A stretch of 64,000 nucleotides of DNA. It comes from Macrostomum hystrix (taxonomy: Eukaryota > Animalia > Platyhelminthes). The stretch is from contig CATNEN010000033.1 in NCBI GenBank assembly GCA_950097015.1, positions 62,001 through 126,000 of the forward strand, written 5' to 3'. The position numbers and the translations under genes are program-made. Below the pieces are notes generated by a model. That model worked only from the letters and a program-made list of their open reading frames with translations, ran no database searches and had not been told where the DNA came from. Positions 1,510 through 60,723 of this stretch are shown piece after piece. The stretch's first letter is position 1; the number at the start of each line of letters is the position of its first letter.

Positions 1510-2012
1510 ATTTAAAAGAGGTGTTCGGACTGATGTGCGAATCAAAAACATGATGTTCCACAGGCTGAACCAGCTCAAATGGAATATTGAACTTGCTATC
1601 GACTTTGCGGCCATACTGTTGTTTTGAGCGGTGTATCGAGTTTTTGCATTGTACCATTTTCATTTTGTATACTTTACAAACAGAATGCTTTTTGTAACCT
1701 CTTTAGAAATTGAAGCCTTTTGGGCCTAAGAAAATATATGACCATGTACCATATTCTGTGATTTTTCCGTTTTTTTCTGGCTTGAATACAAGCTAAACGA
1801 TAAACTACCAACAAACACTTGAAAATTTAGGTTTAAAAATAATATAGATGAACTGCAGGCTTGAAGGCAAAGCAAGTGTTAAACTACGATTTGGCATTGC
1901 GGGCCACAATGTGTAGAATAATTTCAAAAGTCTTAAAGAGCTAGCTTGCATTGAATCAAAACTAATAGCAGCAATAAGATTTTTAATAGGTTGGCAAATT
2001 AAACCAAACAAT

Positions 2013-5000
2013 TCAAAGTGCCACAGGCGATGCAGCTTCGTTTATTCGGCGCCTGGAATTACTTCCAGAAGGGCAACTGTTGACCAGCACGAGGCTTGCA
2101 GCCACCGGAGCATCAGTGCTTCGACTCTTCACCAGGAGGTGTTGCAGCAGCTTCCTCCGCTTCTGCATAGGAGGCTGATCTTGTACAGAGTGAGTCGCTT
2201 CGCAAGGAGATGACCGGACTGGATTTCTAAAGATTGGGAATCAGCAGAATAAATAGCAGAGAGCTGAAGTTATGCGTAAAAATTTAAACTTTTCCTGATT
2301 GTTTTGAGCACCCAATGGCATATGCTACGGTTGGCCGTTGTTTTAACTATTCGCAAAATTACCTTTGGATGCCTGCCGAGCACTTCTGCTGCTGAATCTC
2401 CTGCTGGTGCTGCTGCCAGAGCTTCTTCAACTGTCGACTTCGTCTTCGCCTGGCTCGCGTGCGCCTGAGCTCGCGGATGTTACTAACAGCCAGACTGTAG
2501 CCTTTGTGCAGCGTGAGCAGAACTCCGCACAGGGCGGCCCCGACACTCCACACGGACTGGGTGCGCATGATGTAGGACTCGGCTACGATGCTACTTTTCC
2601 ACTCGAAGAAGAGGAAGAACTGCTTCTGCTGCTTTCCTCGACGCTGCTGTGAAGCATTGCCGTCAGTTTGGTGACGGTCCCAATGCCACACAAGGCTGTA
2701 CTGTAAATGATCGAGGCGCAATAGTTGTGTGCGGCATACTTGACCTGTTGGGGATTTCCCTTGGCAAATACATCCTTTTTTATTTACACGAGGCCTTCTT
2801 AAATTCATTCGATCCTGAAGAAGCCTGAAGAAAAATGTATGAAATCATGCATCATAATGTATGTTAGCATGCATCATAATGTGTGTTAGCATGCATAAAT
2901 CTCACCTCCAAGTCAAGAACCACCTGTGTCGTCTCGTCGCCGCCCTCCAGCTCCATGCGAGTCATGCTCAGCCGGTTCCACATGCGCAGCCCAGCCGAAG
3001 CGGCGTGCATCGGCTGGTGACTGCGGATGCCGCTGATGAAGTCCAGCTGATCTGCCTGTGAGCTGGAATGACATCGATCAATTATAAAATTTGTCTTTAA
3101 TATTTTCACAACTTCGAGATCAACTATTCTTAGTAGTAAAAACGTGCAGAGCACGAAGCATATTTCACCGAATAGATTGCCTGATTGAATAATTTCGATT
3201 TTTATAAGCAATACGACGAAACAAGACGAAAACAATCAATAGTCACTCATGTCTACAAATACCATGCAAAGTACCATGCCATCAATAAATTGATGCAACC
3301 AACCGATTCGAAAACAGCCAGTAGTTGTGAAACATCAGAAACCCCAACGAGTAAAACTCCTGGTCGTCATTGCTGTCAACGGTGAAGTACAGAAAAAGCG
3401 TCTCCTTCTCTTTGACCCTGGCCGGTCCCATGAATATGAGGATGCCATGCCCAGCAGACTCGTCAGTTTCATTGTCTGCCCCATCTTTGTAGGTCAAGCT
3501 TCGATAGTTGCAGTTGGTCTGGTTCAGATTCCACTGGGTGGCGTGGTCTGAAATCGAGATGGTTTAAAGCGTGATTGGATCCTTGGGGAAGAAGACAGAC
3601 CAGCTCGTGAGAGGTCTCCGGGTCAGGCTCCCGTCTGGTCCTCCGTCATCAACGTCATCAATTTGTACGAGTAGTGGCGCCCCGTGGTGGTGGCGCCCCC
3701 CATTAATGAAGCTGGCGCCTCATGGTAGTGGCATAGTGGGGCCCCCTCATAGTGGCGCACCCGTGGTAGTGGCGCGCCCATGTGGAGCTGAACATGGCCC
3801 TGTGTGGATACCTCTCTTTGCCGCGATGGACTACAACCAGATAGTGGACCTGCTTGCCAAGGCTGGCGACAAGGAGTCTCTAAACTCATGACGAGTTCAT
3901 CTCATTTATGCCGTCCTTGGAGGCCAAATAGTGAAGCCATTTTACCTGCACACGACTCTTCAACAAGTTTGCTTCAAAGATTTCCTTTATCATAATGTCA
4001 TACATAATAATTAAACTTAAATTATGTTTCTGCGTGGAATATAGATGCAAAACGAAATTTATAAACAAATATGGAAGCATTTTGATTTCGATTTCCGTGG
4101 TCAGTGGCCAGTGGCGTATTTGTAGTCAGTGGCGTACCACATGGTGACGCCCCCGTTGTAGTGGCGTCCCCATGCGGTAGTGGTGCCCCCATGTGGTAGT
4201 GGCGCCCCCATGTGGTAGTGGCGTCCCCATGTGGTAGTGGTGCCCCAATGTGGTAATGGCGCCCCCATGTGGTAGTGGCGTCCCCATGTGGTAGTGGTGC
4301 CCCAATGTGGTAATGGCGCCCCCATGTGGTAGTGGCGTCCCCATGTGGTAGTGGTGCCCCAATGTGGTAATGGCGCCCCCATGTGGTAGTGGCGTCCCCA
4401 TGTGGTAGTGGTGCCCCAATGTGGTAATGGCGCCCCCATGTGGTAGTGGCGCCCCCATGTGGTAGTGTGGCGCCCCCATGCGGTAGTGGCGCCCCCATGT
4501 GGTAGTGGCGCCCCCATGCGGTAGTGGCACCCCAATGTGGTAGTGGCGCCCCAATGCGGTAGTGGCGCCCTGGAGAGGAAGCAACGCCCTTGAGAGGCAT
4601 TGTAGTCAGTGTGGCGTAGCCAGGATTTTTGTCTAGGGAGGGCCGCACATTTTGGGGGCGCCACGACTGGGGGGCACCACTACCTGGGGGTCTAGTGAAA
4701 TAGGCGTTTCATTAAGCAATGAGGAGATGAGTAAAGCAAAGCGTGATTGGAGATGCAGAAACAACAAATGCCAAATTCTAATCCTGAACCTGAAATATTA
4801 TCTTTCTAGTATGAGTAAGAACTGCTATAAATTATGAGCTAGATTTAAACTGGTTATTTTGTTCAGTGCCCCATCCCTAGAATGCATTCTGAGACTCACG
4901 CACTCCAGAACTCAGCGCTGAGCAGTCTGTAGTAGCTGCAGGACTGCAGAGCCGGTCCGCTAGGAAAGAATGCGATGCCTGCAGTTTTGAGGAGCAAATT

Positions 5001-5920
5001 AACGACGAGTAAAAAATTTTTCTGAGAAACACGATCTCTACTGTGATGAGTTTCTTCCATATTAAGCACATAGTTGACCGCAGCCGTATTGGATGTCTTG
5101 TGTCTCTTGGGAGTTTTGTGGAAAGAAATTCACTTGCCATAGCAGTTGGCTGTGTCAAAGCAAAGTGGAATGCAGCAGTCAGCAGGGCTTCTGTCGACTA
5201 GTTGAGTCCAAAATTACTAGTTGAGTTGCGGTGCGAGTTTGACTTTCTTCCGAATTTCAGCTCCACTTTCCTTAATTTTTCGCACTTCTCTCAAGTTTCC
5301 TTAAATAGTTCCTAATTTCGTTTCTCTCGCTAGTTTACACTCCCACTTACGTTTTCGTATCATTCTGATCATTCCAAAATCTAGTTTTATTTAGCTTGCG
5401 AAACAAAATTCTATTGCAACCTACCCGGCGCCTCATACTGGTCAACTGGTCGATGCTTCACAGAGCGCACAGGAAACCGAGTTGCCTGCAGCAGGTCCTG
5501 GATCAGCTGCACTGTAAAAAGGCATGCTGCTACGCCAACAATCGCCATGGCAACGGTGCTGATCACGCGCCAGTAATATTCGCGTTTGGATATGTACTTT
5601 TCTTCAACTATCGGTTGTTGGCCAGTTGAGGCACCAGCTGCTGCAGTAAAACCTGTGGAGCTGTATTAATTTAGAAATACTAAATGAAACCTAAGCTGAA
5701 CTAGGAGGTCAATTAGTACTCTAGAACCAGGAGTTACTAATTGCTCTATAAAAGTATGCAAAAAATTATCAACTGCATGTACTAAGGAACGCGGACAATC
5801 ATAAAACTAAAACCACACTTACCTGGCGCCTGCAACAAGACTACTCGCACTTCGAATCATAGCCTTACTCCATCGCCGTCCATCGGAACTGCTGGGTGCT
5901 TCACAATTATTCATTTCCAT
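2013..5920 (-). CDS. PACC1: Proton-activated chloride channel PACC1/TMEM206 homolog, about 453 aa, 7 exons
   Basis: Exons 5920-5823, 5660-5425, 4978-4904, 3547-3304, 3062-2906, 2700-2363, 2226-2013 join in frame (1362 nt). TM1 is followed by FPVRSVKHRPVDQYEAPGIAFFP..LQSC (human HPVMSVSYKEVDRYDAPGIALYP..LLSC). Also FMGPARVKEKETLFLYF (QGPREVKKRELVFLQF), SAGLRMW (SGGFRTW), FFLFFEWKS (FFVVFEWKD) and TM2 WSVGAALCGVLLTLHK (WNTIALLCGAFLALFK). Confidence 0.85.
4120..4580. repeat. GC-rich minisatellite, ~19-bp unit (CCCCATGTGGTAGTGGCG) with a ~57-bp higher-order period, in PACC1 intron 3
   Basis: Visible tandem units. A related short patch lies at ~3676-3790. It is flanked by CAGTGGCGTA-type MITE-like ends at ~4110 and ~4607. 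Confidence 0.9.
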
Positions 5921-6991: not shown

Positions 6992-7684
6992 CTGTCAAGA
7001 ATAATAAAGGCAAAAGTCATTGGTAAATGATTATGCTAGGCCTATATAGAATTTTGTACCAGGCAACATGTAGGCCTATCTCTATGGCTGGTATAGGTAG
7101 CTAGCCTCAAATGACAGGTAATAGTATAATTAAGTATATACCTATGGGCCTAAATGACCATAAAATGATAGCATTCTGAAACCACAGCATTTCTTGTCCT
7201 TAGTTGGCCTAGAGTAGGTGAAAATAAAACTAATTTAAAAGAAAATGAGTATGTAGATATTCTCTATATGATAAAATGTTTCATATTGAAAGTAATATCA
7301 AATCTATTAAAGTAAATTTTTTTCATATGCTTGAATTTTTTTTCAAATGTCTTCATTCAAGCATATGACCTAAGGTTCTGTCATTTAGAAAGTGTTTAAC
7401 CTGAGTATGATATACAACAGGCAGACACATGAAATTTGTCTTATTAACATTAGACCATCAAGAAATGTTTTTCACACCTTGACAAATAGACAATCTTGGT
7501 ATATTATGTGAATCACATATGTGAATATGTGAATGGTCTGAGTGATTTTTGCAATTAAGTCCTTGTTTATTAGCTTAGACAACTAAAACTCAGATATATA
7601 TCATATGAGAAAATAATTTTCCCTCTATCCTCTCTGACATTATCTATCCTCCTTGCTGTGTATTCTGAACTTGTACACTCAGAA

Positions 7685-9830
7685 ATGTTCGGTCAAGTAG
7701 TGATTGGTCCGCCGGGCTCTGGAAAGTCCACCTATTGCGCTGGTATGTCTGAACTACTTCGGCGCCATCTGAAACGCAATGTGGTGCTGGTTAACTTGGA
7801 CCCAGCCAATGATCAGCTACCATACAAAGCAGACATTGATCTGACTGAGCTGGTGCGCCTGGAAGAAGCTATGGAGCGCTTGGGCCTCGGACCAAATGGT
7901 GGCTTGCTCTTCTGCATGGACTTCCTACTGAAGAATGTCGACTGGCTCCTGGATAGAATGAAAGAATTTTCCAACGCCTACTTTCTATTAGACATGCCAG
8001 GTTTGTGATAGATGCGTAGAAAAAAACTTGTGCATGGATCATATCGGCTCGTAGCTACTCAAATAATGGCACTGCAGTGTCACCTTTCTGAAAATTTTAA
8101 GTTGGACCGATTTACAATTAGTGGCACAGCAATTCGCATGCAAAAACACTAGGTACAGTACAGCTGTTCAGTCCACGGACTGGGGATGCCCTTCCTAGCG
8201 GAATATCATACGAATTCAGAATCCAAACTCATATCAATTATAAAAGTAACTGCAGCAACTAACAAATACAAAACTCAACAGGCCAGGGGGAACTGTACAC
8301 CAGCGACCAATCAGTGCAATTCACCCACCTCCCCAACAGGCCAGGGGGAACTGTACACCAACGACCAATCAGTGCAATTCACCCACCTCCCCAACAGGCC
8401 AGGTGGAACTGTACACAAACGACCAATCAGTGCAGCGGCTGCTTGACCACCTGACTAGCAAATGTGACTACAGACTAGCCTGCGTTCACCTGGTCGACTC
8501 TCATTATTGCACAGACGCCGGCAAATTCATTGCAGTACTGCTCACTAGCCTGAGTGCTATGCTCAACCTGCAGCTGCCTCACGTTAATGTTCTATCCAAG
8601 GCTGACCTCATTGAACAGTACGGCGAGCTGCCATTTCACATAGACTACTTCACTGACGTGCTGGACCTGTCCTATCTGGTGCGGAGCCTGGAGGGAGACC
8701 CCGTGCTGCACAAGTATCACAAGTGAGCATAGACTGACTCATTTCAGCAGCACCGATTGTTTTTGCATTGGGCTTGTTTAGGGCTGTCAATTTCCTCCGA
8801 TTATTCAGGGTCACCTTCCCCCTCCAATAATTCAGGGTCACCTTCCCCCTCCTATAATTCAGGGTCACCTTCCCCTCTAATAATTCAGGGCCACCTTCCC
8901 CCTCCTATAATTCAGGGTCACCTTCCCCTCTAATAATTCAGGGTCACCTTCCCCTATAATAATTCAGGGCCACCTTCCCCCTCCTATAATTCAGGGTCAC
9001 CTTCCCCTCTAATAATTCAGGGTCACCTTCCCCCTCTAATAATTCAGGGTCACCTTCCCCCTCTAATAATTCAGGGTCACCTTCCCCCTCTAATAATTCA
9101 GGGTCGACTTGCCCCGGTTATGCAGTGTCACCTTCCCTCCAATAATTCAGGGCCATCTCCCCCCCCGATTATTCAGGGTCACCTTTCCCCCCCCCGATTA
9201 TTCAGGGTCCCCTTTCCCACCGATTATTCAGGGTCACCTTCCCCCCGATTATTCAGGGTCACCTTCCCCCCGATTATTCAGGGTCACCTTCCCCCCGATT
9301 ATTCAGGGTCACCTTTCCCCCCGATTATTCAGGGTCCCCTCCCCCCCGGTTATTCAGGGTCACTTTCTACCGATTATTCAGGGTCCCCTTTCCCCCCGAT
9401 TATTCAGGGTCACTTTCTACCGATTATTCAGGCTCCCCGCGATTATTCAGGGTCACCTTCCCCCCGATTATTCAGGCTCCCCGCGATTATTCAGGGTTTG
9501 ATTTGAAGCCACCCGGTTCGCACCCACCCTAGATTCACCAGCGCCCTGGCGGATCTGGTTGAAAGCCACTCGCTGGTTAGTTTCAGCCTTCTGGACATTC
9601 AGGATCGCGAGTCGGTACTCCGTCTGCTGCGCGGCGTCGACCAGGCCAACGGCTACGTGTTCGGCGATGCCGAGGAGAGGAGCATTGCCGCGCTGCTGTC
9701 CTGCGCTGTTGGCGCTGATTTCGAGTACGCCAAGATTCAGTCGGTGCACGAGAAGTACACTGGCGGGGGCGAGGCCAAGAATGCAACGCCAGATGGCGAA
9801 GAGGACATTCAGATCGACTTTCTGGCATAG
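7685..9830 (+). CDS. GPN2: GPN-loop GTPase 2
   Basis: Exons 7685-8000, 8398-8722, 9533-9830 in frame. Motifs GQVVIGPPGSGKSTYC, NLDPAND, GPNGG loop, DxPGQVELYT, HVNVLSKADL and VDQANGYVFG. Confidence 0.92.
8276..8433 (+). repeat. 58-bp triplication spanning the GPN2 intron 1 / exon 2 junction
   Basis: CAACAG|GCCAGG(G/T)GGAACTGTACAC...GACCAATCAGTGCA occurs three times, giving acceptors at 8282, 8340 and 8398. Confidence 0.9.
8790..9497. repeat. ~23-bp minisatellite (ATTATTCAGGGTCACCTTCCCCCCG) in GPN2 intron 2
   Basis: Visible tandem units of variable C-run length. Confidence 0.92.
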
Positions 9831-13206: not shown

Positions 13207-15352
13207 TCATCCGATCTTCTTCTCGTCTTCTGTGGCGTCGACCTCCTGTGGCAGCGCGCTGTCCAGCAGGGCATTCAGCCGGTTGACCAGGAGGCCGCAG
13301 ATGCCGATGCCCAGAGTCAGGTGTAGCAGGCAGGCGCCCAGCCTGACGCGGCTGTCCAATCCGGGTGTGAAATCGCCCAGTCCCACACTGCTCACCGACA
13401 CCATTGAGAAGTAGGCGCCGTCTGTCACCGACCAGCTCTCGGTGGCCGCGAACAGCAGGCCGCCCGCCAGGCTGTGACCTGCCAGCAGGGCTGCCGTAGT
13501 GCTCACTGGCAGGTCGTCGCCCACAGCTCCGCCGCCGCCGCTAAGCAGCTGAGCCGGCAGGCGGGAACGAAGGATTCTCTGAAGGCTGGCGCTGAGCCGA
13601 CCGGCGAACACCAGGAACAGCGGGATACCAGCCATGGCGTACAGGACGCTGAACCACTTGCCTGCCTGGCTGCTGGGGTGCGCGTGCCCGTAGCCTTGGG
13701 GATGGGAGAGAGAAAGCAATTCTATTTATAGACTGCATTCTTAAATTAGATCGTATTGATTCGATTGAATAGATTGTTTTGTTATTTAGTAAACACAGAA
13801 TACAGACACTGCGACTGCGACTAGGCAGATGTGAGCCGAGTGGGCACTGTCTATGGCCTGTCCCTCTTCCTTTTCCTCTCAATTTGCCCCCTCTTCCTCA
13901 CTTTCCTACTATTTCCTTCCCTTATTTATTGTCTTCTCACCCTATTCCTACTCCTCCCAGTCTATTCCTCTTCCTCTCACTCCATTCCCCTTCATGTCCG
14001 ATTGAGGTGTGAAATTTACACCACGCTGCGCGAGACAGGCACAACTGGGCAGCACTCGACTGCCGACTCAAATACGAGTACAACTCAGCTTAAGTCGGTG
14101 GGTAGGGGGGCGAGTGGGTCAGCGGCTAACGTCGCTGCCTCGCACTCCAAAGGACGCTAGTTCGATTCACCCTTTAAGTCACGATTGATTTCGGGACTTG
14201 CTGGGGGGTTTGGACAGTAGCGACCGGCGGAGGTGCACCATATTTCGTGCAATCAAAGCTTGAAATAATAGCTTCGCTCCTACCTTCTGTGTGCCTGTTC
14301 TGCGTTGTGTGAGTTGTGTGCGTTAGTGCTGGGGCGTGAGACCTTGCGGGAGGTGGCTGGAGGGCGGGTGTACACCGCCGCGCGCTTTCTGGACTTCCGT
14401 CAGCGCGATTGGATAAGTGTACACTCATCACCCGGCCCCCCCTGAGGACTGATTTCTTATCAGCCTTCCGCCCCGGCTTGGTCTGCTATGTGCGTGTGGG
14501 GCTGGGGTGGGGGGCACTGCTGCCTATTCTGGGTGCCTCCTGCCCTCCCCGGCTGGTCTGTGCTGCTGTGTGTGGTGCCTGCTCAGGGGAGGCGGCGCGA
14601 TGGGCGCAAAAGCGCCTAGTTCGCCGGTCTGGGGGCGTGCCGCTCCGTCGCTTGTGCGACAAGTGCCCCGGCCCCCCTGCAAATAGATAGAAATAGATAG
14701 ATAAGTCGGTGGGTGGTGGGTGTCTGGAGTGGGTGTGGGCTTTGGGTGTCTGGAGTGGGTGTGGGCTTTGGGTGTCTGGAGTGGGTGTGGGCTTTGGGTG
14801 TCTGGAGTGGGTGTGGGCTTTGGGTGTCTGGAGTGGGTGTGGGCTTTGGGTGTCTGGAGTGGGTGTGGGGGTGGGTGTCTGGGGTGGGTGTCTGGGGTTG
14901 GTGTTTACACCCAATCAGCGAGCTTCGATTGTAGACATAAGATAGACAAATCTGATTGATCGATAGGGCCCGGGTTGTTCTCAAATGGATCAGCGGCCGT
15001 CACCTATGGTGGTGTAGAGCGTGAAGCAGTACAGGAATGCGCTGTTGAAGTTCCATTCCAGCCGGGTCCTGTACTGCTGCCATTTGGCGATCTGCTTCCT
15101 TGAGGCCGCCACAAAGTCCTCCCTGGACACCAATTTGCTGGTACGGATCTCGTACAGTTTGTACAGAAAATTCTTGTCCACCTCGTCCGCTCTCAAGCCT
15201 CTCTGCTTTGGCGGCAGCTGGCTATTCTCCAGCTTCATCACAATCGCTGCTCCCAGACAGGTGTACACCAGCAGAATGCCTATCAGGCCGTGTAGACTGG
15301 CCAGGTTCTTCAGCACTAGAGCGATTGGACTAGAGCCGCTTTTAGAGGCCAT
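13207..15352 (-). CDS. Two-pore-domain potassium channel (K2P/KCNK family)
   Basis: Exons 15352-15004 and 13694-13207 (phase 1). The splice completes P1 as W.F.SAFLYCFTLYTTIG|YG. M2 is FSVLYAMAGIPLFL; P2 is DGAYFSMVSVSSVGLGDFTP. Confidence 0.88.
14104..14701 (+). mobile_element. tRNA-derived SINE, ~600 bp, in the K2P intron
   Basis: A-box-like TGGGTCAGCGG at 14115-14125 and B-box-like GTTCGATTC at 14160-14168. 3' tail AAATAGATAGAAATAGATAGA. 13-bp TSD TAAGTCGGTGGGT at 14091-14103 and 14702-14714. Confidence 0.75.
14714..14890. repeat. 26-bp G-rich minisatellite (GGGTGTCTGGAGTGGGTGTGGGCTTT)
   Basis: About 6 visible tandem units. Confidence 0.9.
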
Positions 15353-15869
15353 TTTGGTGCTGCAGAGTGACTTCCCTAGTGGGATATAATTCCTGTTGTG
15401 CCTAGAAGTGTCGCAGGAATCTCATTTTTATTGACGCAAAAATGGGAGCTGGATGGTAGGAAGAGAGGGTGGAAAAGAAGGGAAAGGGAGTGACCGGTTT
15501 CGTATTGGCGATGTACTTTAGCCAGTCTCCCCCGCGGTGCCACAGTCTGTTGTACACTGGCTAGGGCATCTAGCCTACCATTTGCCGACCGGTCCTCACG
15601 TTTGGCAAAGCCGCAACTGTCCGTTCGCTTCCCAAGTAAAATGATCCCCTCCCGAAGAAAAATGGCAGTGTTCCTTTTTCCTCACACGATTCCTGCATCT
15701 TAACTGGAGGTCTGGCCTTCTGTGTATTTGTTGCTTCATTATCTTCAGGCTGCTGGAATTAGACAGTTGGCGTAAATACTGCATAGGCTTATCAATCACA
15801 GCCAGTTCTAAGCTCTGATTTATCGAAAGGCGTTCCTAAAATTGCCAGAATAGTGAGAAGAAGAAACTA

Positions 15870-20454: not shown

Positions 20455-20668
20455 GCTTATTCCGCCGCCAAGTCTGTGAAGAGAACAGCGAGAGAAAAAC
20501 TGGCAAAACTTTGAGAATTCGAAGAACCGGAGGAGAATTCGTTTTCGATTGTTTGTATGAACTTTCTGCTAACTTGCCCAAGCACAGAGATTGGGAGAGC
20601 TGTGGATTTAGGAGAGAGTGACAAACTGAGAGGAAAAGAGACCAGAGAGAGAGAGAGACAGACAGGCA

Positions 20669-21563
20669 ATGAAAGCCAGGCCGACGGACACTCTGCGATC
20701 AGTTCTGCGACGCCGTTTAACAGGCAGCAGCGTCGGAAGCGCCGGTCAGGCGGGCGACGCCGACGGTCCAGCCGAGCCGGACGGCCCCAGCCAGGAGGAG
20801 CTGGCGGAGGAGGGCCGCCGGCTCTGTCGCGACTATATTCGGCACCGGCTGCAGCGCAGCGGTGTCCTCACCCAGAAGCTAGCCGACTCGATGTCGGCCG
20901 ATGCTGCAGCAGCCGCCACAGCTAGCACCGCTGCCCAGACTTGCCAGGAGCTGCGTCTAGTCGGCGAGCACCTGGAGTCGATGTACCCGGATCTGTACAA
21001 GAATGTGCACAAGCAGCTGAACATCACCATGCACTCCGAAGAGGTGGTCAGGCGCACCTTCGGCATGTTCGCCGAGCAGTTGTGCAGCGGCGGCATTCAC
21101 TGGGGCAAAATTGTTGCGCTATTCGCAATGGCCGGAGCGTTCGCTGTCGACTGCGTCCAGCAGGGCCACCAGGAGTTTGTTGCGCGCATTGTGGACTGCT
21201 TTGGCAGCTTTGTGGCAACACGGCTGACGGACTGGCTCAGGAAACAGGGCGGCTGGGTCCTGGTGAGTCTCGGGCTGATGGGTACCTGCTAGTCCAGGAT
21301 TGTTGGGTACCCTGGCGTCAGTCCCGATCCTGTGAGCCGGGTCCATGGGTACCTGTGAGTCGCTCGCGGTCGATACGTACCCCTTATAGCGGGCTAATTG
21401 GTATGATTAGTATCGTGATTTAACAAATGCATCTCATGCACTGCAGCCTGAAGTGACTCGAGATGCGAAGCGCGAGAGCGACAGAACCTGGTTCTGGCTG
21501 ATGTTGTCGGTGGGTGCCCTGGTGCTGTTCGTCTCGACATTGCTTATTTCGGCATCGCTTTAA
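20669..21563 (+). CDS. BOK: Bcl-2 family protein, BOK-like
   Basis: Exons 20669-21262 and 21447-21563. BH4-like LCRDYIRHRL, BH3 LRLVGEHLE, YKNVHKQL, BH1 GIHWGKIVALFA, AVDCVQQG, BH2 WLRKQGGW, and a C-terminal TM anchor TWFWLMLSVGALVLFVSTLLI. Confidence 0.88.
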
Positions 21564-22729: not shown

Positions 22730-25221
22730 ATGAGGCGCAGTCCAGATGTGTGGAATCTGGCCGGAGCCAGTCGGAACGAAGCGGCTATCTACTACATCGA
22801 CTCGCAGCAGCAGCAGCAGCAGCAGTGGCAGCAGCATCAAATGCAGCAGCCAGCAGTCTACGTCAACTCCGGCTACTCAATCAGCGAGGCTGAATTCCAT
22901 CCCAAGCGTCTGCACCAGACGACGATGCAACTGCAGCAGCCATTACCATCTATTCTAGACAACGAAGACGACTACAGGGCCTGGCTGACTGCGAACTACC
23001 AGCCGATGTTCGCTCCCTACGCGTCTGTTAGAGGCATGCCGAATCGGCTGTTCCTGGAGCTGTTCTCGCGCCAGGATCTGCTGAGAAATCGGAAGCTCAC
23101 GGATCTGATGTCGCGCATCGATGCTAATCGTGACGGCCGCGTCTCCTGGCCGGAGTTCTACAGCTTCATGACTTACAGGCAGCGGCGCGAGGTGCCCGCA
23201 GGTCGGCGCTTCCTAAATGGAATAGTACGCGGCGCGGCGCCGGCGGCTGCGCGCAAGGAGAGCGAGGTTCGCGCCGACAATCTCGCCGCCGGGGAGCCGG
23301 TGCCTGGCGAGGCCTACTTGGAGTTCTACGACTGCAAGCCCCCGCCAATATTCGTGCCGCTAACTGTCGTTGGCATCTGGGTGGCATTCCTCATCTACAT
23401 GGCCGAGCTCAACAGGGGCCCCGAGTCGAATTGGGTCACCTGGACTGGCGGCGTGCCCTACTACAGTCCTCTGTGCTTCTGCCCGGCTAGGCGGCAAGAG
23501 GTGCGTCGATATTCACAAAGACATTCACAGAGACATTCACATAGATTTAGTCCAAGTCCCCAGTCCACGGACTGTTAGAAGTGGTGCATAATTTGAGGAT
23601 CGTTTAAATAGGAATACTTACTTGTTACTTAAGTAGTTGTGTTTCAAATTATTATCCTATTTCTCCCTTCAAACAAACAGGTGTGGCGCTTTCTCACCTA
23701 CATGCTGCTTCACGTTGGCTGGCATCACATCATATTCAACTCGGCCCTGACGCTGCTGCTGGGCATCCCGCTCGAGCTGGTGCACAAGGCCTGGCGGGTG
23801 GCACCCATCTTTCTCGCCGGCGTCCTGGCCGGATCCATGCTATCGTCTATGGCCGAACCCGCCGTCACCCTGCTGGGCGCATCCGGCGGTGTCTACGCCC
23901 TGATTGGCGCGCACTACGGCCTGGTGATCATGAACTGGGAGGAGCTGCAGGAGGGCTGGCAGGACTGGCGCAAGAACCCGCTGCGCCTATTCTCTAGCGG
24001 TGTGTTCCGCCTGCTACTGCTGACTCTGCTGGTGGCCCTGGACTTTGGCGTGGCGCTGTACAGGTGACACCGCTGTCCGTTGTCCGTTTCCTGAGTCTGT
24101 TCAGTCTGTTTCCAGTGTCTGTTCAGTCTGTTACTGGAGTCTGTTCAGTCTGTTTCCTGTGTCTGTTCGGTCTGTTTCCAGTGTCTGTTCAGTCTGTTAC
24201 TGGAGTCTGTTCAGTCTGTTTCCTGTGTCTGTTCGGTCTGTTTCCTGAGTCTGTTCAGTCTGTTTCCTGTGTCTGTTCGGTCTGTTTCCAGTGTCTGTTC
24301 AGTCTGTTTCCTGTGTCTGTTCAGTCTGTTTCCTGTGTCTGTTCGGTCTGTTTCCTGAGACTGTTCAGTCTGTTTCCTGTGTCTGTTCAGTCTGTTACTG
24401 GAGTCTGTTCAGTCTGTTACTGGAGTCTGTTCAGTCTGTTACTGGAGTCTGTTCAGTCTGTTTCCTGTGTCTGTTCAGTCTGTTTCCTGTGTCTGTTCAG
24501 TCTGTTACTGGAGTCTGTTCAGTCTGTTACTGGAGTCTGTTCAGTCTGTTACTGGAGTCTGTTCAGTCTGTTACTAAAGTCTGTTCAGTCTGTTACTGGA
24601 GTCTGTTCAGTCTGTTTCCTGTGTCTGTTCAGTCTGTTTCCTGTGTCTGTTCAGTCTGTTACTGGAGTCTGTTCAGTCTGTTACTGGAGTCTGTTCAGTC
24701 TGTTACTGGAGTCTGTTCAGTCTGTTACTGGAGTCTGTTCAGTCTGTTACTGGAGTCTGTTCAGTCTGTTTCCTGTGTCTGTTCAGTCTGTTTCCTGTGT
24801 CTGTTCAGTCTGTTACTGGAGTCTGTTCAGTCTGTTTCCTGTGTCTGTTCAGTCTGTTTCCTGAGTCTGTTCAGTCTGTTACTGGAGTCTGTTCAGTCTG
24901 TTTCCAGTGTCTGTTCAGTCTGTTTCCTGACTGAGCAACCTGATCACACCAGAGTGTTAAGCATGACCTGCCCACCCATCCAGGCGTTACACCTTGGCCA
25001 GCTTGGACAACTCGGTCTCGCTGACCGCCCACGTCGCCGGCTTGCTGTGCGGCATCCTGGTGGGAGTTCCCTGCCTGCGCAATCTGGACAAGAAGCCCTG
25101 GGAGATGGTGCTGTTCTGGATAGCCATCGTGCTGCTCCTGGCCTTCTTAGTTCTGGCTGTGCTGTGGAACATCTTCTACAAGGGCTACCCGTTGGACATT
25201 CCGTGCAATTTGGGAACTTGA
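22730..25221 (+). CDS. Rhomboid intramembrane serine protease with N-terminal EF-hand (RHBDL3/Rhomboid-4-like)
   Basis: Exons 22730-23500, 23681-24063, 24984-25221. EF-hand DANRDGRVSWPEF, PPPIF, WRFLTYMLLH, catalytic GASGG and AHVAG. The start codon is uncertain. Confidence 0.9.
24085..24930. repeat. GTCTGTTCAGTCTGTT(TCCTGT/ACTGGA) ~22-bp minisatellite in rhomboid intron 2
   Basis: Visible tandem units of two variants. Confidence 0.92.
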
Positions 25222-28806: not shown

Positions 28807-29682
28807 CTAAAACACTGTCGGGCACTCGCAGATGTAGCCGATGGACGAGTAGCAGAAGAAATCGTCGAGGCCGCTGCTGAACTCATGGTACAGACAGGCG
28901 CAGCTCTGCACCGGAGCGCCGGCATCCGGCTGGCCCGCCTCCCAGATGTTGCGGTCGATAGTGGAGTTGCAGGCGTCCCACACCCAGTTGTCCTTCTTGT
29001 CGGCGCTGGCAATCAGCTGGAAACCGCTCAGGTGGTAGCTGACGCCTGGCGACCTGAGCGACATCAGCCAGGCCAGCTCGTCCGAGTCCCCTACGTCGGC
29101 CAGTTTAGCGAGGCCACCGTTGGCGGCGCAGGCAGCCTTGGCGGCCGATGACGTGGCCGTCGGCGATTTTACTACCTTGTATGAAGTGCCATTGCTGTGG
29201 GAGGACCGGATCGATACGGTAATGAGAACGTGAACTGTGGCTAGAGAACAAAGACGACCGCGTGCCTACCGAGAATGTGAATATCCGGTCGGACAAAGAC
29301 TGCCTGGAGCTGCGCCAGACAATCGACGCACAAATACTTTGCCATCGGCGCCGTCGCCGCTGCCGCAAGCCACAGACGAGTCCCTGACAGCATGGCTGCA
29401 CTTGTCGAAAAGGAATAGCCGGCATCGGCACAGGCTGAGCGGCTGGAAGGCCTGGCACCGCTGGTTGGCGGCACAGACCAGAGCGCACGACTGCGCGCCG
29501 CAGACTGCATGCAGAACTCGCTGAAATTCCAACCTTACCCCGCAGGCGCCGCCTGTGCCGGCCACTTGATCAAAGTCGGAGCAGGCTGCCGCTAGCTGTC
29601 GTTGCCATGGCAACACAAGCAGCAGCAACATATGGGATAAAGTCATTATAGAAACGGAAGGGAAGTGGCATTTGGCTTCCAA
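28807..29682 (-). CDS. Secreted protein: signal peptide + PAN/Apple-like Cys domain + C-type lectin domain
   Basis: Exons 29682-29270 and 29194-28807 with a 75-nt intron. Hydrophobic leader, then SCALVCAANQRCQAF..C.C.LF. CTLD has A...C...GG.LA, WVW, WEAGQPD, C.CL, LDDFFC and YICE. Confidence 0.82.
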
Positions 29683-30134: not shown

Positions 30135-30345
30135 CCAGAGCCGCAGCTATCGCGCGGTGTATCTGAGGGCTGCGTACGGCTGTTCAGTCCATGGACTGGG
30201 GGGACGCCACACCTACCTCAATTACTCCAGCTGATGCTGGTACCCATTAAACACCTGGGTGAACTGAAGCAAAGCAAAGTGTCTTGCTAAAGGACACAAA
30301 TCGTTCCGAACCACCGACCTTGAAGTATGAAGCAGCCGGGCCTCC
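30135..30345 (+). mobile_element. SINE-like element with an L2/CORE-type body
   Basis: CTGGTACCCATTAAACACCTGGGTGAACTGAAGCAA...AAGTGTCTTGCTAAAGGACAC resembles metazoan SINE core/L2-tail motifs. Related pieces lie at ~8161, ~23558 and 27400-27510. Confidence 0.55.
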
Positions 30346-30380
30346 TTCCTGTGCTTCCGAGTGAAGAGGCCCCGAATTTT

Positions 30381-30757
30381 GATGCTTGCTATACTCAGAT
30401 GCTTGCTATACTCAGATGCTTGCTATACTCAGATGCTTGCTATACTCAGATGCTTGCTATACTCAGATGCTTGCTATACTCAGATGCTTGCTATACTCAG
30501 ATGCTTGCTATACTCAGATGCTTGCTATACTCAGATGCTTGCTATACTCAGATGCTTGCTATACTCAGATACTTGCTATACTCAGATGCTTGCTATACTC
30601 AGATGCTTGCTATACTCAGATGCTTGCTATACTCAGATGCTTGCTATACTCAGATGCTTGCTATACTCAGATGCTTGCTATACTCAGATGCTTGCTATAC
30701 TCAGATGCTTGCTATACTCAGATGCTTGCTATACTCAGATGCTTGCTATACTCAGAT
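30381..30757. repeat. 17-bp minisatellite (GATGCTTGCTATACTCA)
   Basis: About 22 near-perfect units. Confidence 0.95.
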
Positions 30758-31689
30758 GCCTTACTGCCGGCGCCAGTGCATATTCCTGCATTTCCTGTTG
30801 CAGCAGAAACTCAGCCAAAATGAAGGCAAGTCCATTTAAAAGACTCGCAGGGTCTGGTATTTCTAAGAAAAGTGACCAAATTAGCAAGCTAATGCAACAA
30901 GGTAAAATTCGGCAGATCAAATAATAAAACCTTGATTTTGCAGTCTATTTTGCATTCAGTTTTAGTTTGACAATGTAGAATTTCGCAGAGAGTTCTTATT
31001 TGAACTACAGCACAAGAAAAAAATCTTTTACACTGAATTCATTGATTCACTGTGATATCATATTGTTAGGTAGCGATTGACCAATTGTAATTGATTCTCA
31101 GCAGAATTCTCAGCCAATTCAGCTATAATGCGCGAGTGTACACGATAGAGCAGGACGATGAAGGGAGAGGTCGCAAAAAACAGTCGGACAAAATACGGGA
31201 ACGAATAAGTTAAGAGCGCCAAACTGATGCTACTTGTATTGCAGTAGATTTTTAGCTTTAAAAAACCAACCAAAGATCAAGCTGTCAAATTAGTTTAGGA
31301 AAATAGTGGACCGATTTGCTTACTAGATATGCTAGTTGTAGCCGACGAGACAGACTAGCGACCACAGACGAAAACCATCACCAATCAGCAAAAACAGGGA
31401 GGAAACAATTCGCTTCCAAAAAGCGTAACTTGCTACTGTCCGCTCGCAAGTAGGTAGTAGTATAAAGCGAAAACTTTAGCTTTGCCGTGGAAATATCAGG
31501 CGAGCAATTTTTTCAAGCCATAATAAGTAGAAATAACTTTATGTTAAAAATTAACAAAAACTGCACACTTTTATCAAGTATGAGGCGTCAGAAAATATCA
31601 GAAAACCAGAACGAGAACAGGGCAAAACAAAAGTATTGCAATGCCTGCTTTGCCAATGCCTCAACTGGGACGAAGAAGAGCTGCGAAGA

Positions 31690-33200: not shown

Positions 33201-33654
33201 TCAGGAGAGAGCTCCGAGAGAAGAGCTGTATCCGAGCAGCTGATTGGGACAGCCGGACAGCAGGCCGGAACAGGTTCTACAGAATTCGACAGAAACAACA
33301 ACAGAAAAACATTGCTTCAAAGACAGCAGCTCTAAAGCAGGTGGCGTGTATCTTAGGCAACAGCAAAAATAAAGGAAAAAAATAGGTTTCTAAGCGCCAA
33401 CTACTAGAGTATCAACAATGCTACAAGTACTCTCACAAAGATATTAGTTTTCCTTTAAAAAACGCGAGCATGCATAGACAGCTTTGCGGAAAATGGCGAT
33501 TTGGGCCACAGAGATAGAATAGGAAGCACCTGACATTAGCCGGGATTAGAACAGAAGGTTGATTTGCATTTTACAAAAATAAAACAAAGCCGTAAAGCTG
33601 CACAATAAGGACTTAGATAATAAGACAAAAAATAGTGATCCTAAGCGGCGGTAC

Positions 33655-34040
33655 CGGCTGAACCTAAGGACCTGAGGCTTGGAAGCAGCTGAACCTAAGG
33701 ATCTGAGGCTTGGTAGCAGCTGAACCAAAGGATCTGAGGCTTGGTAGCAGCTGAACCAAAGGATCTGAGGCTTGGTAGCAGCTGAACCAAAGGATCTGAG
33801 GCTTGGTAGCAGCTGAACCAAAGGATCTGAGGCTTGGTAGCAGCTGAACCAAAGGATCTGAGGCTTGGTAGCAGCTGAACCAAAGGATCTGAGGCTTGGT
33901 AGCAGCTGAACCAAAGGATCTGAGGCTTGGTAGCAGCTGAACCAAAGGATCTGAGGCTTGGTAGCAGCTGAACCTAAGGATCTGAGGCTTGTTAGCAGCT
34001 GAACCTAAGGATCTGAGGCTTGGTAGCAGCTGAACCAAAG
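33655..34040. repeat. 31-bp minisatellite (GGATCTGAGGCTTGGTAGCAGCTGAACCAAA)
   Basis: About 12 units. Confidence 0.95.
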
Positions 34041-35812: not shown

Positions 35813-44009
<8,197 letters not shown>

Positions 44010-44993: not shown

Positions 44994-46030
44994 CGTGGTG
45001 ATCGCTATGCCGCTTCTACTTTGAAGGACTTCTTCAGCATGCTGCAATACTATTTGGTAAACGAGTGTGGAAAGCCATGGAGCCTCTGGACGGATATGGA
45101 ATTCAATGAAAGCCGGCGTGCGCTTGATGCTTCAATGAAGCTGAGTACCCGTGAGGGAAAGGGCAGTGGATTGCGACGTGGACGACCTGTTCCACCTAGC
45201 ATCGAGGAGAAGCTCTGGTCTGAAGGTATGCTTGTTGGTAGTGAGAGCCCACGACAACTGCTGAGTGCCGTGATTTGGGGTCTCGAAAACATTTTGCACT
45301 ACGCGGGGGTTCCGAGTTGCGAGACCTACAGTACAATCGACATATCCGGCTAGAAACCGTTGGTGAAGAGGTCTGCTTAGTTTACAGGGACAACACTAGA
45401 TCGAAGACCAACCAGGGTGGTTTGAAGAGCCTTCGAAGAGAACCGAAGATCGTTAGAGCCTTCCACACCGAAGACGATTCTAAGTGCATCGTCTGTCTGT
45501 ATACCGAGTACGTTTCGCGTCGGCCGAGCGAATTTTGCGAGGCTCTTTTCTTGTCATGCAACAGGCAATGGAAACCCGATGGTCGCTCGGAATGGTTTAC
45601 AAGGACTCCGATTGGACGGCATACGTTGGCCGAAACAGTGAAGTCGCTTGTGACGAAGGTGGCTCCGGACGACACTACTCGCTACACTAACCAGTCATTG
45701 CGCAAAACCTGCGCGACTGTTTTACACGATGCTGGTGTACCGCGCCAGGATATCGCACGGCACACGGGCCATAGTAGCTCTGCTCTAGAGCGATACATCG
45801 ATGTTTCGTTGACTCAGCAGAAGCGCTTCAGTACCATTCTGTCCCGTTCTGTCCAGGTGAAGGAAGGCGAAGAGACGCGGTGCGTGAGCACTGCTAGCAC
45901 CTCTGCGGTGGTGGGATCTGGAGACGTCGAGAGGCATCAAGAGGGGCCTGCCAATGGACAGACACTAGCGAAGAAGATGCGTGTGGAGTTGTGCGGTGAG
46001 ACGAATCGTGTAGTTGTCTACTTTGATTGA
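44994..46030 (+). mobile_element. Crypton-type (DUF3504-like) tyrosine recombinase, frameshifted
   Basis: Y..STL, EEKLW, SPRQLL, then a frameshift near 45285, then FALRGG.E, SKTNQGGL, C.V.LY..Y..RRP, TNQSLR, TGHSS and RY. Confidence 0.8.
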
Positions 46031-47911: not shown

Positions 47912-49152
<1,241 letters not shown>

Positions 49153-57553: not shown

Positions 57554-58309
57554 CGGCAGCGATAGCAATTGGGTCATCATAATGGATTAGCTTGGGTGTC
57601 GAAGTGGTCCCAACTTAAGCTCTGGTTGGACACATTTATTGCGGTCAAATTTACTCTCCTTTGAACTGCCGCTGCCGATAGATGCCATAAAAAATTGTTT
57701 GTTGCAGCAATAGCACTTTTAGTGCTTATGCACCAAAGCATGCTTGATACTTTATTGATTGAATGCTGCTACTGTGCTCAGGATGTCAACAGAAGGCTCC
57801 TCACATTAGTATTAACTAATCCAGTACATTACAGCTATTGTAGAACAATTTACTCAACACGCGACAGTCCATGCTACTGCTAGCAGACGAAGCCGCGTTC
57901 TGCTTATTAGAAAAACCGAATTCTGAAGGCGAATTAAAAACTGTTGGGCATTACACAAAATAGCAAGAAAAGTAGTATATTAATCAGTATGTGTATTTTT
58001 TATATTAAATATTCTTTTTTATAATTTTCTGCAAATCGGAAATAACTATTTTTTCTTTTTGACAAGGTCTTCACAAGCACGACTAATAATGAGAGTGCAC
58101 TTGTCTTCTTACAAAAAATAAATTCGTACGATATAGGGCAATTCATTAGTGACCTGACTAAAGGAATTTGTTTAAGACTATAAGTAGGATTTCAGGTAGA
58201 ATGAATTAAACTAATTGATCGGGCAAGACTTGTTTGTACTCGTAAATTTTTCATAGTCACTTAGAACAACAAAGTGCCACGCGCAAAAGGAAAAATATTT
58301 TTCTTGACC

Positions 58310-58602
58310 TTTATCAGCAACCTTACGGCATCATCGGCAACCTCATCAGCAACCTTACAGAATCATCAGCAACCTCATCAGCAACCTTACAGAATCATCA
58401 GCAACCTTATCAGCAACCTTACGGCATCATCGGCAACCTCATCAGCAACCTTACAGAATCATCAGCAACCTTATCAGCAACCTTACAGAATCATCAGCAA
58501 CCTCATCAGCAACCTTACAGAATCATCAGCAACCTCATCAGCAACCTTACAGAATCATCAGCAACCTCATCAGCAACCTTACAGAATCATCAGCAACCTT
58601 AT
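58310..58602. repeat. 32-bp minisatellite (ATCAGCAACCTTACAGAATCATCAGCAACCTC)
   Basis: About 9 units. Confidence 0.9.
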
Positions 58603-59028
58603 CATACCTTTCAGCCTCGATAGAAGACTTAACAGTTTTGGCAGAACCTTATACACATTTAGTGAGTAAAAATTCAATATCTTTAGGCCGTAAAGTTATT
58701 GCAACGAAAGAAATGATAAGCAGAAGAGTATAACAATAGAAAACGTCTAAATCGCCCAGTTTTATGTGGCAGCACCGCTGTTAGTTTAGCTTAAAAGTAA
58801 TAGCCGTCAAGACCAGATATGCATTTGTATGTACGAGCGTATAAGAGAGGGAAATAATAAAAAAGGCACACCTTTAGTAAAGCAGGTGTGCCAGTACTGC
58901 AAGAAGGCTAAGGCAATAAAATACCCGCTTCGTTGACTCTAGAGATCGCCTTTTGCCGAAAACTAAATTGTTTTCTAAATAAGCTGCGCAACTCTTATGT
59001 ACATAATAATGTGAATGGCAGCAACCAA

Positions 59029-60692: not shown

Positions 60693-60723
<31 letters not shown>

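What the first reader, a model, noticed from the sequence alone, without database searches (positions are those of the whole stretch)
2013..5920. Intact invertebrate homolog of the proton-activated chloride channel PAC (PACC1/TMEM206)
Seen in sequence: seven exons splice into a ~453-aa, 2-TM protein. It matches human TMEM206 collinearly across the TM1 exit (YEAPG), both ectodomain cysteines, GP.VK..E..FL.F, the FEWK strand and TM2 (LCG..L.L.K). Knowledge: PAC has been characterised almost only in vertebrates and is absent from fly and nematode. Inference: this lineage retains an ASOR/PAC-type channel, useful for dating and testing the family. The ORF track shows only fragments, so automatic annotation could miss it.
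Basis: partly seen in the sequence, partly recalled or inferred. Interest (0 to 1): 0.8.

Follow-up and report, generated by a model that had tools for sequence, protein, structure and literature searches.

The report
Flatworm PAC (TMEM206) chloride channel gene
This is a real, apparently intact flatworm gene of the PAC/TMEM206 acid-activated chloride channel family; papers place the family only in vertebrates and acorn worms, although sequence databases already name relatives in ribbon worms, annelids and one flatworm.

Summary
On the minus strand, seven GT-AG exons (5920..2013) add up to 1362 nt, or 453 codons. Searched one by one, exons 2, 4 and 6 hit only Pfam TMEM206 (PF15122), in the right order. 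In the PDB they hit essentially only PAC channels. Exons 2-6 align without a break to the 306-aa PAC-like protein of the ribbon worm Tubulanus.

The nearest relative is a 249-aa Macrostomum lignano fragment that UniProt names "Proton-activated chloride channel". In a tree, exons 4, 5 and 6 each join it inside a spiralian clade.

Conserved:
- both transmembrane helices
- both ectodomain cysteines
- the TM2 lysine that sets anion selectivity (human K319)
- E181, E261 and D269

Not conserved: the three histidines that set human pH sensitivity (H98 is F, H130 is Y, H131 is Y), and E257 is probably Q. Anion conduction is therefore likely, but acid gating is unproven.

Exons 1 and 7 have no homology support, and no RNA evidence was obtainable. 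Papers say the family stops at deuterostomes, but NCBI and UniProt already label nemertean, annelid and M. lignano proteins as PAC-like. I class it as a new member of a known kind, of moderate interest. The scan holds no earlier PAC note on other DNA.

The parts
5823..5920 (-). Exon 1 (ATG at 5920-5918; 32 codons plus 2 nt). Putative cytoplasmic N-terminus.
   Evidence: This is the first ATG after an in-frame TAA at 5980-5978. The donor is CAG|GTAAGT. Exon GC is 0.50 against 0.33 in intron 1. It has no homolog and no RNA support, so it is unverified.
5425..5660 (-). Exon 2: N-terminal cytoplasmic stretch, TM1 (about 5501-5566) and the TM1 exit ...TRFPVRSVKHRPVDQYEAP(G). The codon TTT at 5476-5474 (Phe) stands where human PAC has His98.
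   Evidence: Pfam TMEM206 15.4 bits, profile positions 18-60. PDB PAC chains match at human residues 75-114. blastp to Tubulanus P0005 residues 3-57, E 5e-10. Family HMM 28.2 bits. Kyte-Doolittle 19-residue maximum 2.40 at residues 32-50.
4904..4978 (-). Exon 3: (G)IAFFPSGPALQSCSYYRLLSAEFW. It holds the first ectodomain Cys (4940-4938). Tyr-Tyr at 4934-4929 stands where vertebrate PACs have His130-His131.
   Evidence: It aligns to P0005 residues 59-74, directly after E2, whose match ends at 57. The Cys-to-Cys spacing to exon 4 is 24 residues, the same as in Tubulanus. Only the donor GGA|GTGCGT keeps the frame into exon 4. Alone the exon is too short to hit Pfam or the PDB.
3304..3547 (-). Exon 4: ectodomain finger and beta-ball strands. 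It holds the second conserved Cys (3512-3510), sequons NQT and NET, GPARVKEKETLFLYF, and Glu at 3404-3402, which matches human E181.
   Evidence: Pfam TMEM206 27.7 bits, profile 92-155. PDB PAC at human residues 146-209, E 5e-5. M. lignano P0001 43% identity, E 2e-20, and P0005 residues 86-158. Family HMM 43.8 bits.
2906..3062 (-). Exon 5: ectodomain, ...HAASAGLRMWNRLSMTRMELEGGDETTQVVLDLE. The final Glu matches human E261.
   Evidence: No hit alone in Pfam or the PDB. It matches M. lignano P0001 residues 83-130 (44%, E 3e-13) and Tubulanus residues 163-209 (E 3e-6). Family HMM 21.8 bits. The E4/E5 junction has a second in-frame option, exon 4 ending at 3301 and exon 5 starting at 3055, which gives a protein one residue shorter.
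2363..2700 (-). Exon 6: YSLVWHWD (Asp 2679-2677 matches human D269), the FFLFFEWK strand, TM2 (about 2485-2556) with Lys at 2505-2503 matching human K319, then a basic cytoplasmic stretch.
   Evidence: Pfam TMEM206 34.3 bits, profile 220-292. PDB PAC chains E 2e-6 to 7e-4, with K319 aligned. P0001 77% identity, and P0005 residues 210-294 following directly on E5, whose match ends at 209. Family HMM 71.6 bits. The alternative acceptor at 2814 would add 38 residues that have no homolog.
2013..2226 (-). Exon 7: a 71-residue C-terminal tail and the TGA stop (2015-2013).
   Evidence: The acceptor is tctttag|A, phase 2. The frame is open from 2240 to the stop. GC is 0.55 against 0.37 in intron 6. 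It has no homolog. If intron 6 is retained the protein ends ...AGIQR at the TAA at 2361-2359, giving 383 aa. Unverified.
1982..1987 (-). ATTAAA hexamer, resembling a poly(A) signal, 26 nt after the stop codon.
   Evidence: Read directly from the sequence. By itself it is only a consensus match.

Best explanation
The locus is a single-copy, seven-exon, protein-coding gene of the TMEM206/PAC family in a Macrostomum-type flatworm, inherited vertically within Spiralia.

By analogy with solved vertebrate PACs, the product would have two transmembrane helices and a glycosylated, beta-rich ectodomain of about 250 residues. It would assemble as a trimer in which TM2 lines the pore, and the conserved TM2 lysine would make the pore anion-selective.

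Shown here: family membership, collinearity of exons 2-6 with full-length relatives, two hydrophobic helices, two conserved cysteines, and the K319, E181, E250, E261 and D269 equivalents.

Inferred: trimer formation, chloride conduction, and opening by acid on the luminal or extracellular side.

Acid gating is the weakest step. The three histidines that set pH sensitivity in human PAC are Phe, Tyr and Tyr here, and E107 of the acidic pocket is Pro. If the channel is proton-gated, it must rely on carboxylates such as the D269 equivalent, and its pH dependence is likely to be shifted.
For: - Pfam PF15122 is the only family hit, on three exons in profile order, and two exons pass the 27-bit gathering score on their own.
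- PDB searches with E2, E4 and E6 return PAC chains (7jna, 8h8d, 8zlb and others) for every hit better than E 0.3.
- An exhaustive HMMER search with exon 6 gives 23 hits. The best is M. lignano A0A1I8GFN0, 'Proton-activated chloride channel', at 75% identity. Others are named PAC-like in Tubulanus, Ridgeia and Ptychodera.
- Per-exon blastp is collinear with Tubulanus P0005: 3-57, 59-74, 86-158, 163-209, 210-294. This fixes the E2/E3 and E5/E6 junctions to the residue.
- A family HMM built without flatworm data hits E2, E4, E5 and E6 in order.
- In a maximum-likelihood tree, the separate rows for E4, E5 and E6 all join M. lignano (99/100) inside a spiralian clade (100/99).
- All splice sites are GT-AG. 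Exon GC is 0.49-0.63 against 0.33-0.40 in the five short introns. GC3 is 0.70-0.81 in E3-E6.
- The roles of the residues come from Osei-Owusu 2022, PMC9351481.
Against: - There is no transcript evidence. The only public contigs that match are collinear with the genome and run unspliced through intron 6 and the exon 6 acceptor.
- E1 and E7 have no homolog, and their GC3 (0.38 and 0.50) is lower than in exons 3-6.
- The donors of introns 3 and 4 are weak (GTGCGT, GTTGGT), and the E4/E5 junction has an in-frame alternative.
- The pH-sensor residues H98, H130 and H131 are not conserved. E257 is probably Q, a change that nearly abolishes current in human PAC.
- The flatworm branch is long, 1.92 changes per site, so function may have drifted.
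- No fold or trimer model of this protein was made.
Confidence: 0.9

Rival explanations
1. It is a true PAC-family protein that is not proton-activated. It would be either constitutively or otherwise gated, or active only at much lower pH, because the histidine sensor set is missing.
For: H98 is F, H130 is Y, H131 is Y and E107 is P. [quoted passage not shown] E257 is probably Q here, and human E257Q is almost dead.
Against: D269, E181, E250 and E261 are kept. H131 is Tyr in all invertebrate relatives seen. H98 is N or R in Lineus, Owenia and Ptychodera, so the vertebrate sensor set may simply not be the ancestral one. No invertebrate PAC has been recorded, so nothing is known either way.
Confidence: 0.35
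2. It is a decaying or unexpressed gene copy (pseudogene) that still looks open by chance.
For: There is no RNA support. Some donors are weak. The branch is long. The only M. lignano entry is a fragment.
Against: - 453 codons are open across seven exons, all with canonical splice sites.
- Identity to M. lignano peaks in the functional core (77% over FFEWK-TM2) and is lower in loops (43-44%). This is the pattern expected under purifying selection.
- Both cysteines, K319 and E181 are kept.
- The exon/intron GC contrast is strong and GC3 is high.
Confidence: 0.06
3. It belongs to another trimeric two-TM channel family (DEG/ENaC/ASIC or P2X) and only resembles PAC.
For: The PAC ectodomain is structurally similar to ASIC/ENaC.
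Against: No exon hits Pfam ASC or P2X even at E<=1. No ASIC, ENaC or P2X chain appears in any PDB search at E<=10. All named relatives are PAC or PAC-like.
Confidence: 0.01

Closest known systems
Macrostomum lignano A0A1I8GFN0 (P0001), 249-aa fragment named 'Proton-activated chloride channel' by UniProt
   Same: It is the nearest relative: 43% identity over exon 4, 44% over exon 5 and 77% over FFEWK-TM2. It shares LHAASAGLR.W, KQFFLFFEWKS and VWSVGA.LCGVLLTLHKGYSLA. Each window exon joins it in the tree at 99/100.
   Different: It is a fragment that starts at the residue matching the exon 3/4 junction, so TM1 and the H98/H130 region cannot be compared. It has a 30-residue Arg-rich insert before FFEWK that the window gene lacks. 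It is too divergent to be the same species' allele.
Spiralian PAC-like proteins: Tubulanus polymorphus XP_074645017.1 (P0005), Lineus longissimus, Owenia fusiformis, Capitella, Lamellibrachia and Ridgeia
   Same: They are collinear over exons 2-6 and share the YEAPGI exit, both cysteines, FRGP/FMGP, SxGLRMW, YSVV, FFxFxEWK and LCGVxLTLHKGY. Fragments P0004 and P0008 read '...LQ' directly before YSVVKF, which suggests the same intron position as intron 5 here.
   Different: Identity is only about 27-43% per exon. Tubulanus, Lineus and Owenia keep His at the H130 position and Tubulanus also at H98, whereas the window gene has Tyr and Phe. The window protein has a longer C-terminal tail, if exon 7 is used.
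Human PAC / PACC1 / TMEM206 (PDB 7JNA, 7JNC); zebrafish and pufferfish PAC structures
   Same: Two-TM topology. The equivalents of C128, C149, the N162 sequon, E181, E250, E261, D269, FEWK288, LCG312 and K319 are all present.
   Different: Identity is about 25-35% over the alignable parts. H98 is F, H130 is Y, H131 is Y, E107 is P, Q296 is Y, D297 is I, and E257 is probably Q, next to a two-residue insertion. The N- and C-termini are unrelated. Function has been recorded only for vertebrate proteins.
Hemichordate PAC (Saccoglossus, Ptychodera, Glandiceps)
   Same: These are the only invertebrate members mentioned in the papers read, and they belong to the same family.
   Different: They lie outside the spiralian clade that holds the window gene. 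Identity to exon 6 is 32%.

Membership tests
PAC / TMEM206 (Pfam PF15122) | Significant match to the family profile, above the 27-bit gathering score | tested here: met
   Exon 4 scores 27.7 bits and exon 6 scores 34.3 bits, each alone. Exon 2 scores 15.4 bits. All three hit in profile order. My own family HMM gives E2 28.2, E4 43.8, E5 21.8 and E6 71.6 bits. The joined protein was not scored.
PAC / TMEM206 (Pfam PF15122) | Two transmembrane helices flanking a large ectodomain | tested here: met
   The Kyte-Doolittle 19-residue maximum is 2.40 in exon 2 (VISTVAMAIVGVAACLFTV) and 1.29 in exon 6 (…VWSVGAALCGVLL), at the positions of PAC TM1 and TM2. No other exon exceeds exon 6's value, and exon 7 peaks at 1.09.
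PAC / TMEM206 (Pfam PF15122) | Two conserved ectodomain cysteines (human C128 and C149) | tested here: met
   Cys is at exon 3 residue 13 and exon 4 residue 12. These are the only cysteines in the ectodomain exons, and their spacing is identical to Tubulanus.
PAC / TMEM206 (Pfam PF15122) | TM2 lysine that determines anion selectivity (human K319) | tested here: met
   Exon 6 residue 66 (AAA at 2505-2503) aligns with K319 in 7jna. The role of K319 is stated in PMC9351481.
PAC / TMEM206 (Pfam PF15122) | H130-E181 pair needed for folding and assembly | tested here: inconclusive
   E181 is kept as Glu. H130 is Tyr. In human PAC, H130R works and H130E does not. Tyr was not tested in the paper, and Saccoglossus has Lys at this position.
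PAC / TMEM206 (Pfam PF15122) | pH-sensor residues H98, H130, H131 and D269 of human PAC | tested here: not met
   The equivalents are F, Y, Y and D, so only D269 is kept. These residues define the vertebrate gating mechanism rather than family membership: H131 is Tyr in all invertebrate members seen, and H98 varies among them.
PAC / TMEM206 (Pfam PF15122) | Joint-region glutamates E257 and E261, whose alanine mutants are dead | tested here: inconclusive
   E261 is Glu, the last residue of exon 5. E257 aligns to Gln next to a two-residue insertion, or to Val if the alignment is ungapped. M. lignano also lacks Glu there.
PAC / TMEM206 (Pfam PF15122) | Homotrimer with an ASIC-like hand-shaped ectodomain | not tested
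This needs a model of the joined protein.
PAC / TMEM206 (Pfam PF15122) | Acid-evoked, outwardly rectifying chloride current | not testable with these tools
   This needs electrophysiology.
DEG/ENaC/ASIC (PF00858) and P2X (PF00864) | Match to the family profile | tested here: not met
   No exon hits either family at E<=1. No such chain appears in the PDB searches at E<=10.

The most novel reading that the evidence does not exclude
PAC channels date back at least to the last common ancestor of protostomes and deuterostomes, not to deuterostomes as the papers read here say. This fast-evolving flatworm branch is a natural 'histidine-less' PAC (F/Y/Y at 98/130/131). It either senses protons through carboxylates alone or has switched to another gating stimulus. 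That would make it a ready-made test of the current pH-sensing model.
Probability: 0.3. Interest if true: 0.6.

Novelty: new member of a known kind. Interest (0 to 1): 0.4.

Why it matters
The papers I could read state that PAC has no homologs below hemichordates (eLife 2019) or is restricted to deuterostomes (bioRxiv 2022). This locus is an intron-containing gene sitting among ordinary animal genes. Together with the nemertean, annelid and M. lignano database entries, it shows that the family is also spiralian. The family is therefore probably as old as bilaterians, and was either lost or is still undetected in other lineages.

No invertebrate PAC has been recorded. This one keeps the selectivity lysine but lacks all three histidine sensors, so expressing it would directly test which residues are really needed for proton gating. 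Macrostomum is also an experimentally tractable flatworm (my own knowledge), in which a physiological role could be probed, for example in endosomal or gut acidification.

The gain is limited because automatic annotation already names such proteins.

Tried and rejected
- RNA support. The look-up of sequencing runs found only two low-share runs of one study. When laid on the window, their contigs are genomic-like: 1938-2600 runs unspliced through intron 6, and 2506-2774 runs through the exon 6 acceptor. They say nothing about splicing.
- Exons 3 and 5 alone against Pfam and the PDB gave no PAC hit because they are too short or too divergent. They were validated against closer relatives instead.
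- Alternative exon 6 acceptor at 2814 (phase 0, adding 38 aa). Rejected because the extra residues match nothing, and E5 and E6 abut exactly in Tubulanus at 209|210.
- Alternative exon 3 donor GTGAGT at 4899. Rejected because it breaks the frame into exon 4.
- Looking for the window's own protein in the databases. It was not found in three word-index searches or in the exhaustive search. The word searches are length- and word-limited, and one search was capped at 8000 candidates, so this is weak evidence that the protein is unannotated.
- Fetching the M. lignano locus to compare introns. P0001 is not on record in the contig index.
- Naming the taxa of the unnamed ENA and JGI fragments. P0091 lies on a 3.1-Mb ENA contig for which no DNA is served. 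P0023 is an intronless 2.2-kb JGI contig of unknown origin.
- Rfam and tRNA scans of the whole window found nothing.
- Yang 2019 (PMC7305803) is not held in the library.
Full report
**Observation.** The minus strand between 5920 and 2013 carries seven open segments that can be joined in one frame only. They are E1 5920..5823, E2 5660..5425, E3 4978..4904, E4 3547..3304, E5 3062..2906, E6 2700..2363 and E7 2226..2013. All six introns begin GT and end AG. The exons sum to 1362 nt, which is 453 codons plus a TGA stop.

The ATG at 5920 is the first ATG after an in-frame TAA at 5980. Exons have 0.49-0.63 G+C, against 0.33-0.40 in the five short introns. Third-position G+C is 0.70-0.81 in exons 3-6. 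Intron 3 (1356 nt) is inflated by a tandem repeat with a 19/57-nt unit at 4158-4570.

- Pfam gives one family only, TMEM206 (PF15122): exon 2 at 15.4 bits (profile 18-60), exon 4 at 27.7 bits (92-155) and exon 6 at 34.3 bits (220-292). The hits are collinear, and two exons pass the 27-bit gathering score alone. No DEG/ENaC or P2X hit appears even at E<=1.
- The PDB sequence search returns PAC chains for every hit better than E 0.3 (7jna, 8h8d, 8zlb, 9hqn and others). Exon 6 has E 2e-6 at human residues 275-340. Exon 4 has E 5e-5 at residues 146-209. Exon 2 is weaker, at residues 75-114. One unrelated chance hit with E above 0.3 appears in each.
- Exons 3 and 5 are too short or too divergent to hit vertebrate PAC alone.

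**Relatives.** An exhaustive HMMER search of 1.84 billion representatives with exon 6 gave only 23 hits at E<=0.001.

- The best hit is P0001 (75% identity), which is UniProt A0A1I8GFN0 of Macrostomum lignano. It is a 249-aa fragment named 'Proton-activated chloride channel'.
- Other named hits are 'proton-activated chloride channel-like' proteins of the nemertean Tubulanus polymorphus (XP_074645017.1) and the hemichordate Ptychodera flava, and a Ridgeia piscesae protein that UniProt names PAC.
- Word-index searches seeded with these added Lineus, Owenia, Capitella, Lamellibrachia, Glandiceps, Saccoglossus and many vertebrates. All carry PF15122.

**Support for the exon model.**

- Per-exon blastp against the 306-aa Tubulanus protein is strictly collinear: E2 to 3-57, E3 to 59-74, E4 to 86-158, E5 to 163-209 and E6 to 210-294. 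The E2/E3 and E5/E6 junctions are therefore right to the residue. The 38 extra residues that an alternative exon 6 acceptor (2814) would add match nothing.
- The spacing between the two conserved cysteines across the E3/E4 junction is 24 residues in both proteins.
- Exons 4 and 5 match M. lignano at E 2e-20 and 3e-13.
- A family HMM built from vertebrate, hemichordate, nemertean and annelid proteins, with no flatworm sequence, hits E2, E4, E5 and E6 in order at 28.2, 43.8, 21.8 and 71.6 bits.

**Phylogeny.** I built a maximum-likelihood tree in which exons 4, 5 and 6 were separate rows. Each joins M. lignano (99/100). That pair sits with nemerteans and annelids in a spiralian clade (100/99). 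The clade is separate from the hemichordates and from the vertebrates, which I used as the outgroup. This pattern is what vertical descent predicts.

Earlier, unchecked notes of this scan call the genome a Macrostomum-type flatworm, and my nearest hit agrees. The flatworm stem is long, at 1.92 changes per site.

**What is not verified.**

- Exons 1 and 7 have no homolog and lower GC3.
- If intron 6 were retained, the protein would end ...AGIQR after 383 residues.
- An ATTAAA hexamer lies 26 nt after the exon 7 stop.
- The E4/E5 junction has a second in-frame solution (3301|3055) that changes two residues to one.
- There is no transcript evidence. The only runs holding the stretch are kept as contigs, and those contigs are collinear with the genome through intron 6 and across the exon 6 acceptor.

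**Functional residues.** I mapped residues to human numbering from the printed PDB alignments and the family alignments. Their roles come from Osei-Owusu et al. 2022 (PMC9351481).

| Human residue | Role in human PAC | Here |
|---|---|---|
| K319 | TM2 lysine, anion selectivity | Lys (2505-2503), kept |
| C128, C149 | ectodomain cysteines | kept |
| N162 sequon | glycosylation sequon position | kept as NET |
| E181 | partner of H130, needed for assembly | kept |
| E250, E261, D269 | ectodomain acidic residues (E261 gating joint; D269 pH sensor) | kept |
| H98 | pH sensor | Phe (5476-5474) |
| H130, H131 | pH sensors | Tyr-Tyr (4934-4929) |
| E107 | acidic pocket | Pro |
| Q296, D297 | H98's resting-state partner (my own knowledge) and its neighbour | Tyr, Ile |
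| E257 | gating joint | probably Gln, beside a two-residue insertion |

[quoted passage not shown] E257Q is almost dead.

Among invertebrate relatives, H131 is always Tyr and H98 varies: N in Lineus and Owenia, R in Ptychodera. H130 is His except in Saccoglossus, where it is Lys, and in this gene. Among the complete sequences I compared, the flatworm protein departs furthest from the vertebrate sensor set.

**Mechanism.** The steps shown are family membership, topology, and the selectivity and structural residues. The steps inferred are a trimer with a TM2-lined anion pore that is opened by acid on the luminal or extracellular face, releasing chloride as vertebrate PAC does in endosomes.

| Claim | My estimate |
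|---|---|
| Genuine PAC-family gene | about 0.9 or higher |
| The exact 453-aa model is right in every junction and both ends | about 0.5 |
| Anion channel | about 0.7 |
| Proton-activated in the vertebrate pH range | about 0.5 |

**Comparison with what is known, and novelty.** Ullrich et al. [quoted passage not shown] A 2022 preprint on DEG/ENaC evolution says PAC channels 'are restricted to deuterostomes'. I found no paper that links PAC with flatworms or annelids.

RefSeq and UniProt, however, already label nemertean, annelid and M. lignano proteins as PAC or PAC-like. The finding is therefore a new member of a known family. It is not a new kind of channel. Its value lies in confirming protostome PAC at a genomic locus with introns, among ordinary animal neighbours: a GPN-loop GTPase, a K2P channel, a Bcl-2 family gene, a rhomboid, a kinase and an actin. 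It also offers a histidine-less natural variant.

Absence from flies and nematodes was not tested here.

The seven exons were not joined into one protein for any search, alignment or fold.

Noticed in passing
window 4158-4570 (with related degenerate copies about 3650-3790 and 4654-4690): Intron 3 of the PAC gene holds a tandem array of about 21.6 copies of a 19-nt unit (GTAGTGGCGCCCCCATGTG), organised in a 57-nt higher-order repeat at 94% matches. It creates long spurious ORFs on the minus strand (208, 187 and 152 aa). Short contigs from public run X1 also match it.
   Followed up: partly
window 2834-2896: A 22-nt unit repeated 2.9 times (AATGTATGTTAGCATGCATCAT) sits inside intron 5, just after the exon 5 donor.
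   Followed up: no
window 7574-8723 (+): Two exon-sized ORFs hit Pfam ATP_bind_1 (the GPN-loop GTPase family) at profile positions 1-100 and 100-193. The gene is transcribed divergently from the PAC gene, leaving about 1.65 kb between the two starts, so a shared bidirectional promoter is possible.
   Followed up: partly
window 13210-15421 (-): ORFs with Ion_trans_2 pore domains (71 and 20 bits), probably exons of a two-pore-domain potassium channel gene.
   Followed up: partly
window 20630-21289 (+); 23633-24064 (+); 28810-29265 (-); 38398-39661 (-); 48082-49149 (+): Other neighbouring genes: a Bcl-2 family domain (90.8 bits), a rhomboid domain (86.7 bits), a C-type lectin (23.3 bits) and a protein kinase, which looks S6K-like by eye. 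There is also an ORF that is plainly actin by eye, not run through a tool.
   Followed up: partly
window 41591-42926 (-) and 45245-46027 (+): A Pif1-type helicase fragment (Pif1_2B domain, 69.6 bits), possibly Helitron-like. Beside it is a DUF3504 plus phage-integrase (tyrosine recombinase) ORF, possibly a Crypton-like mobile element.
   Followed up: no
window 30324-30836, 33549-34004, 36614-38404, 58246-58730, 59274-60730: Several long ORFs are artefacts of tandem repeats or satellites whose periods preserve the reading frame. They give spurious low-complexity Pfam hits, for example from 36626-38404.
   Followed up: no
proteins P0004 and P0008 (ENA fragments) and P0001: ORF-style fragments of PAC relatives from unnamed ENA assemblies read '...LQ' immediately before YSVVKF. 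The M. lignano fragment starts exactly at the residue of the window's exon 3/4 junction. This hints that the positions of introns 5 and 3 are conserved across spiralians.
   Followed up: no
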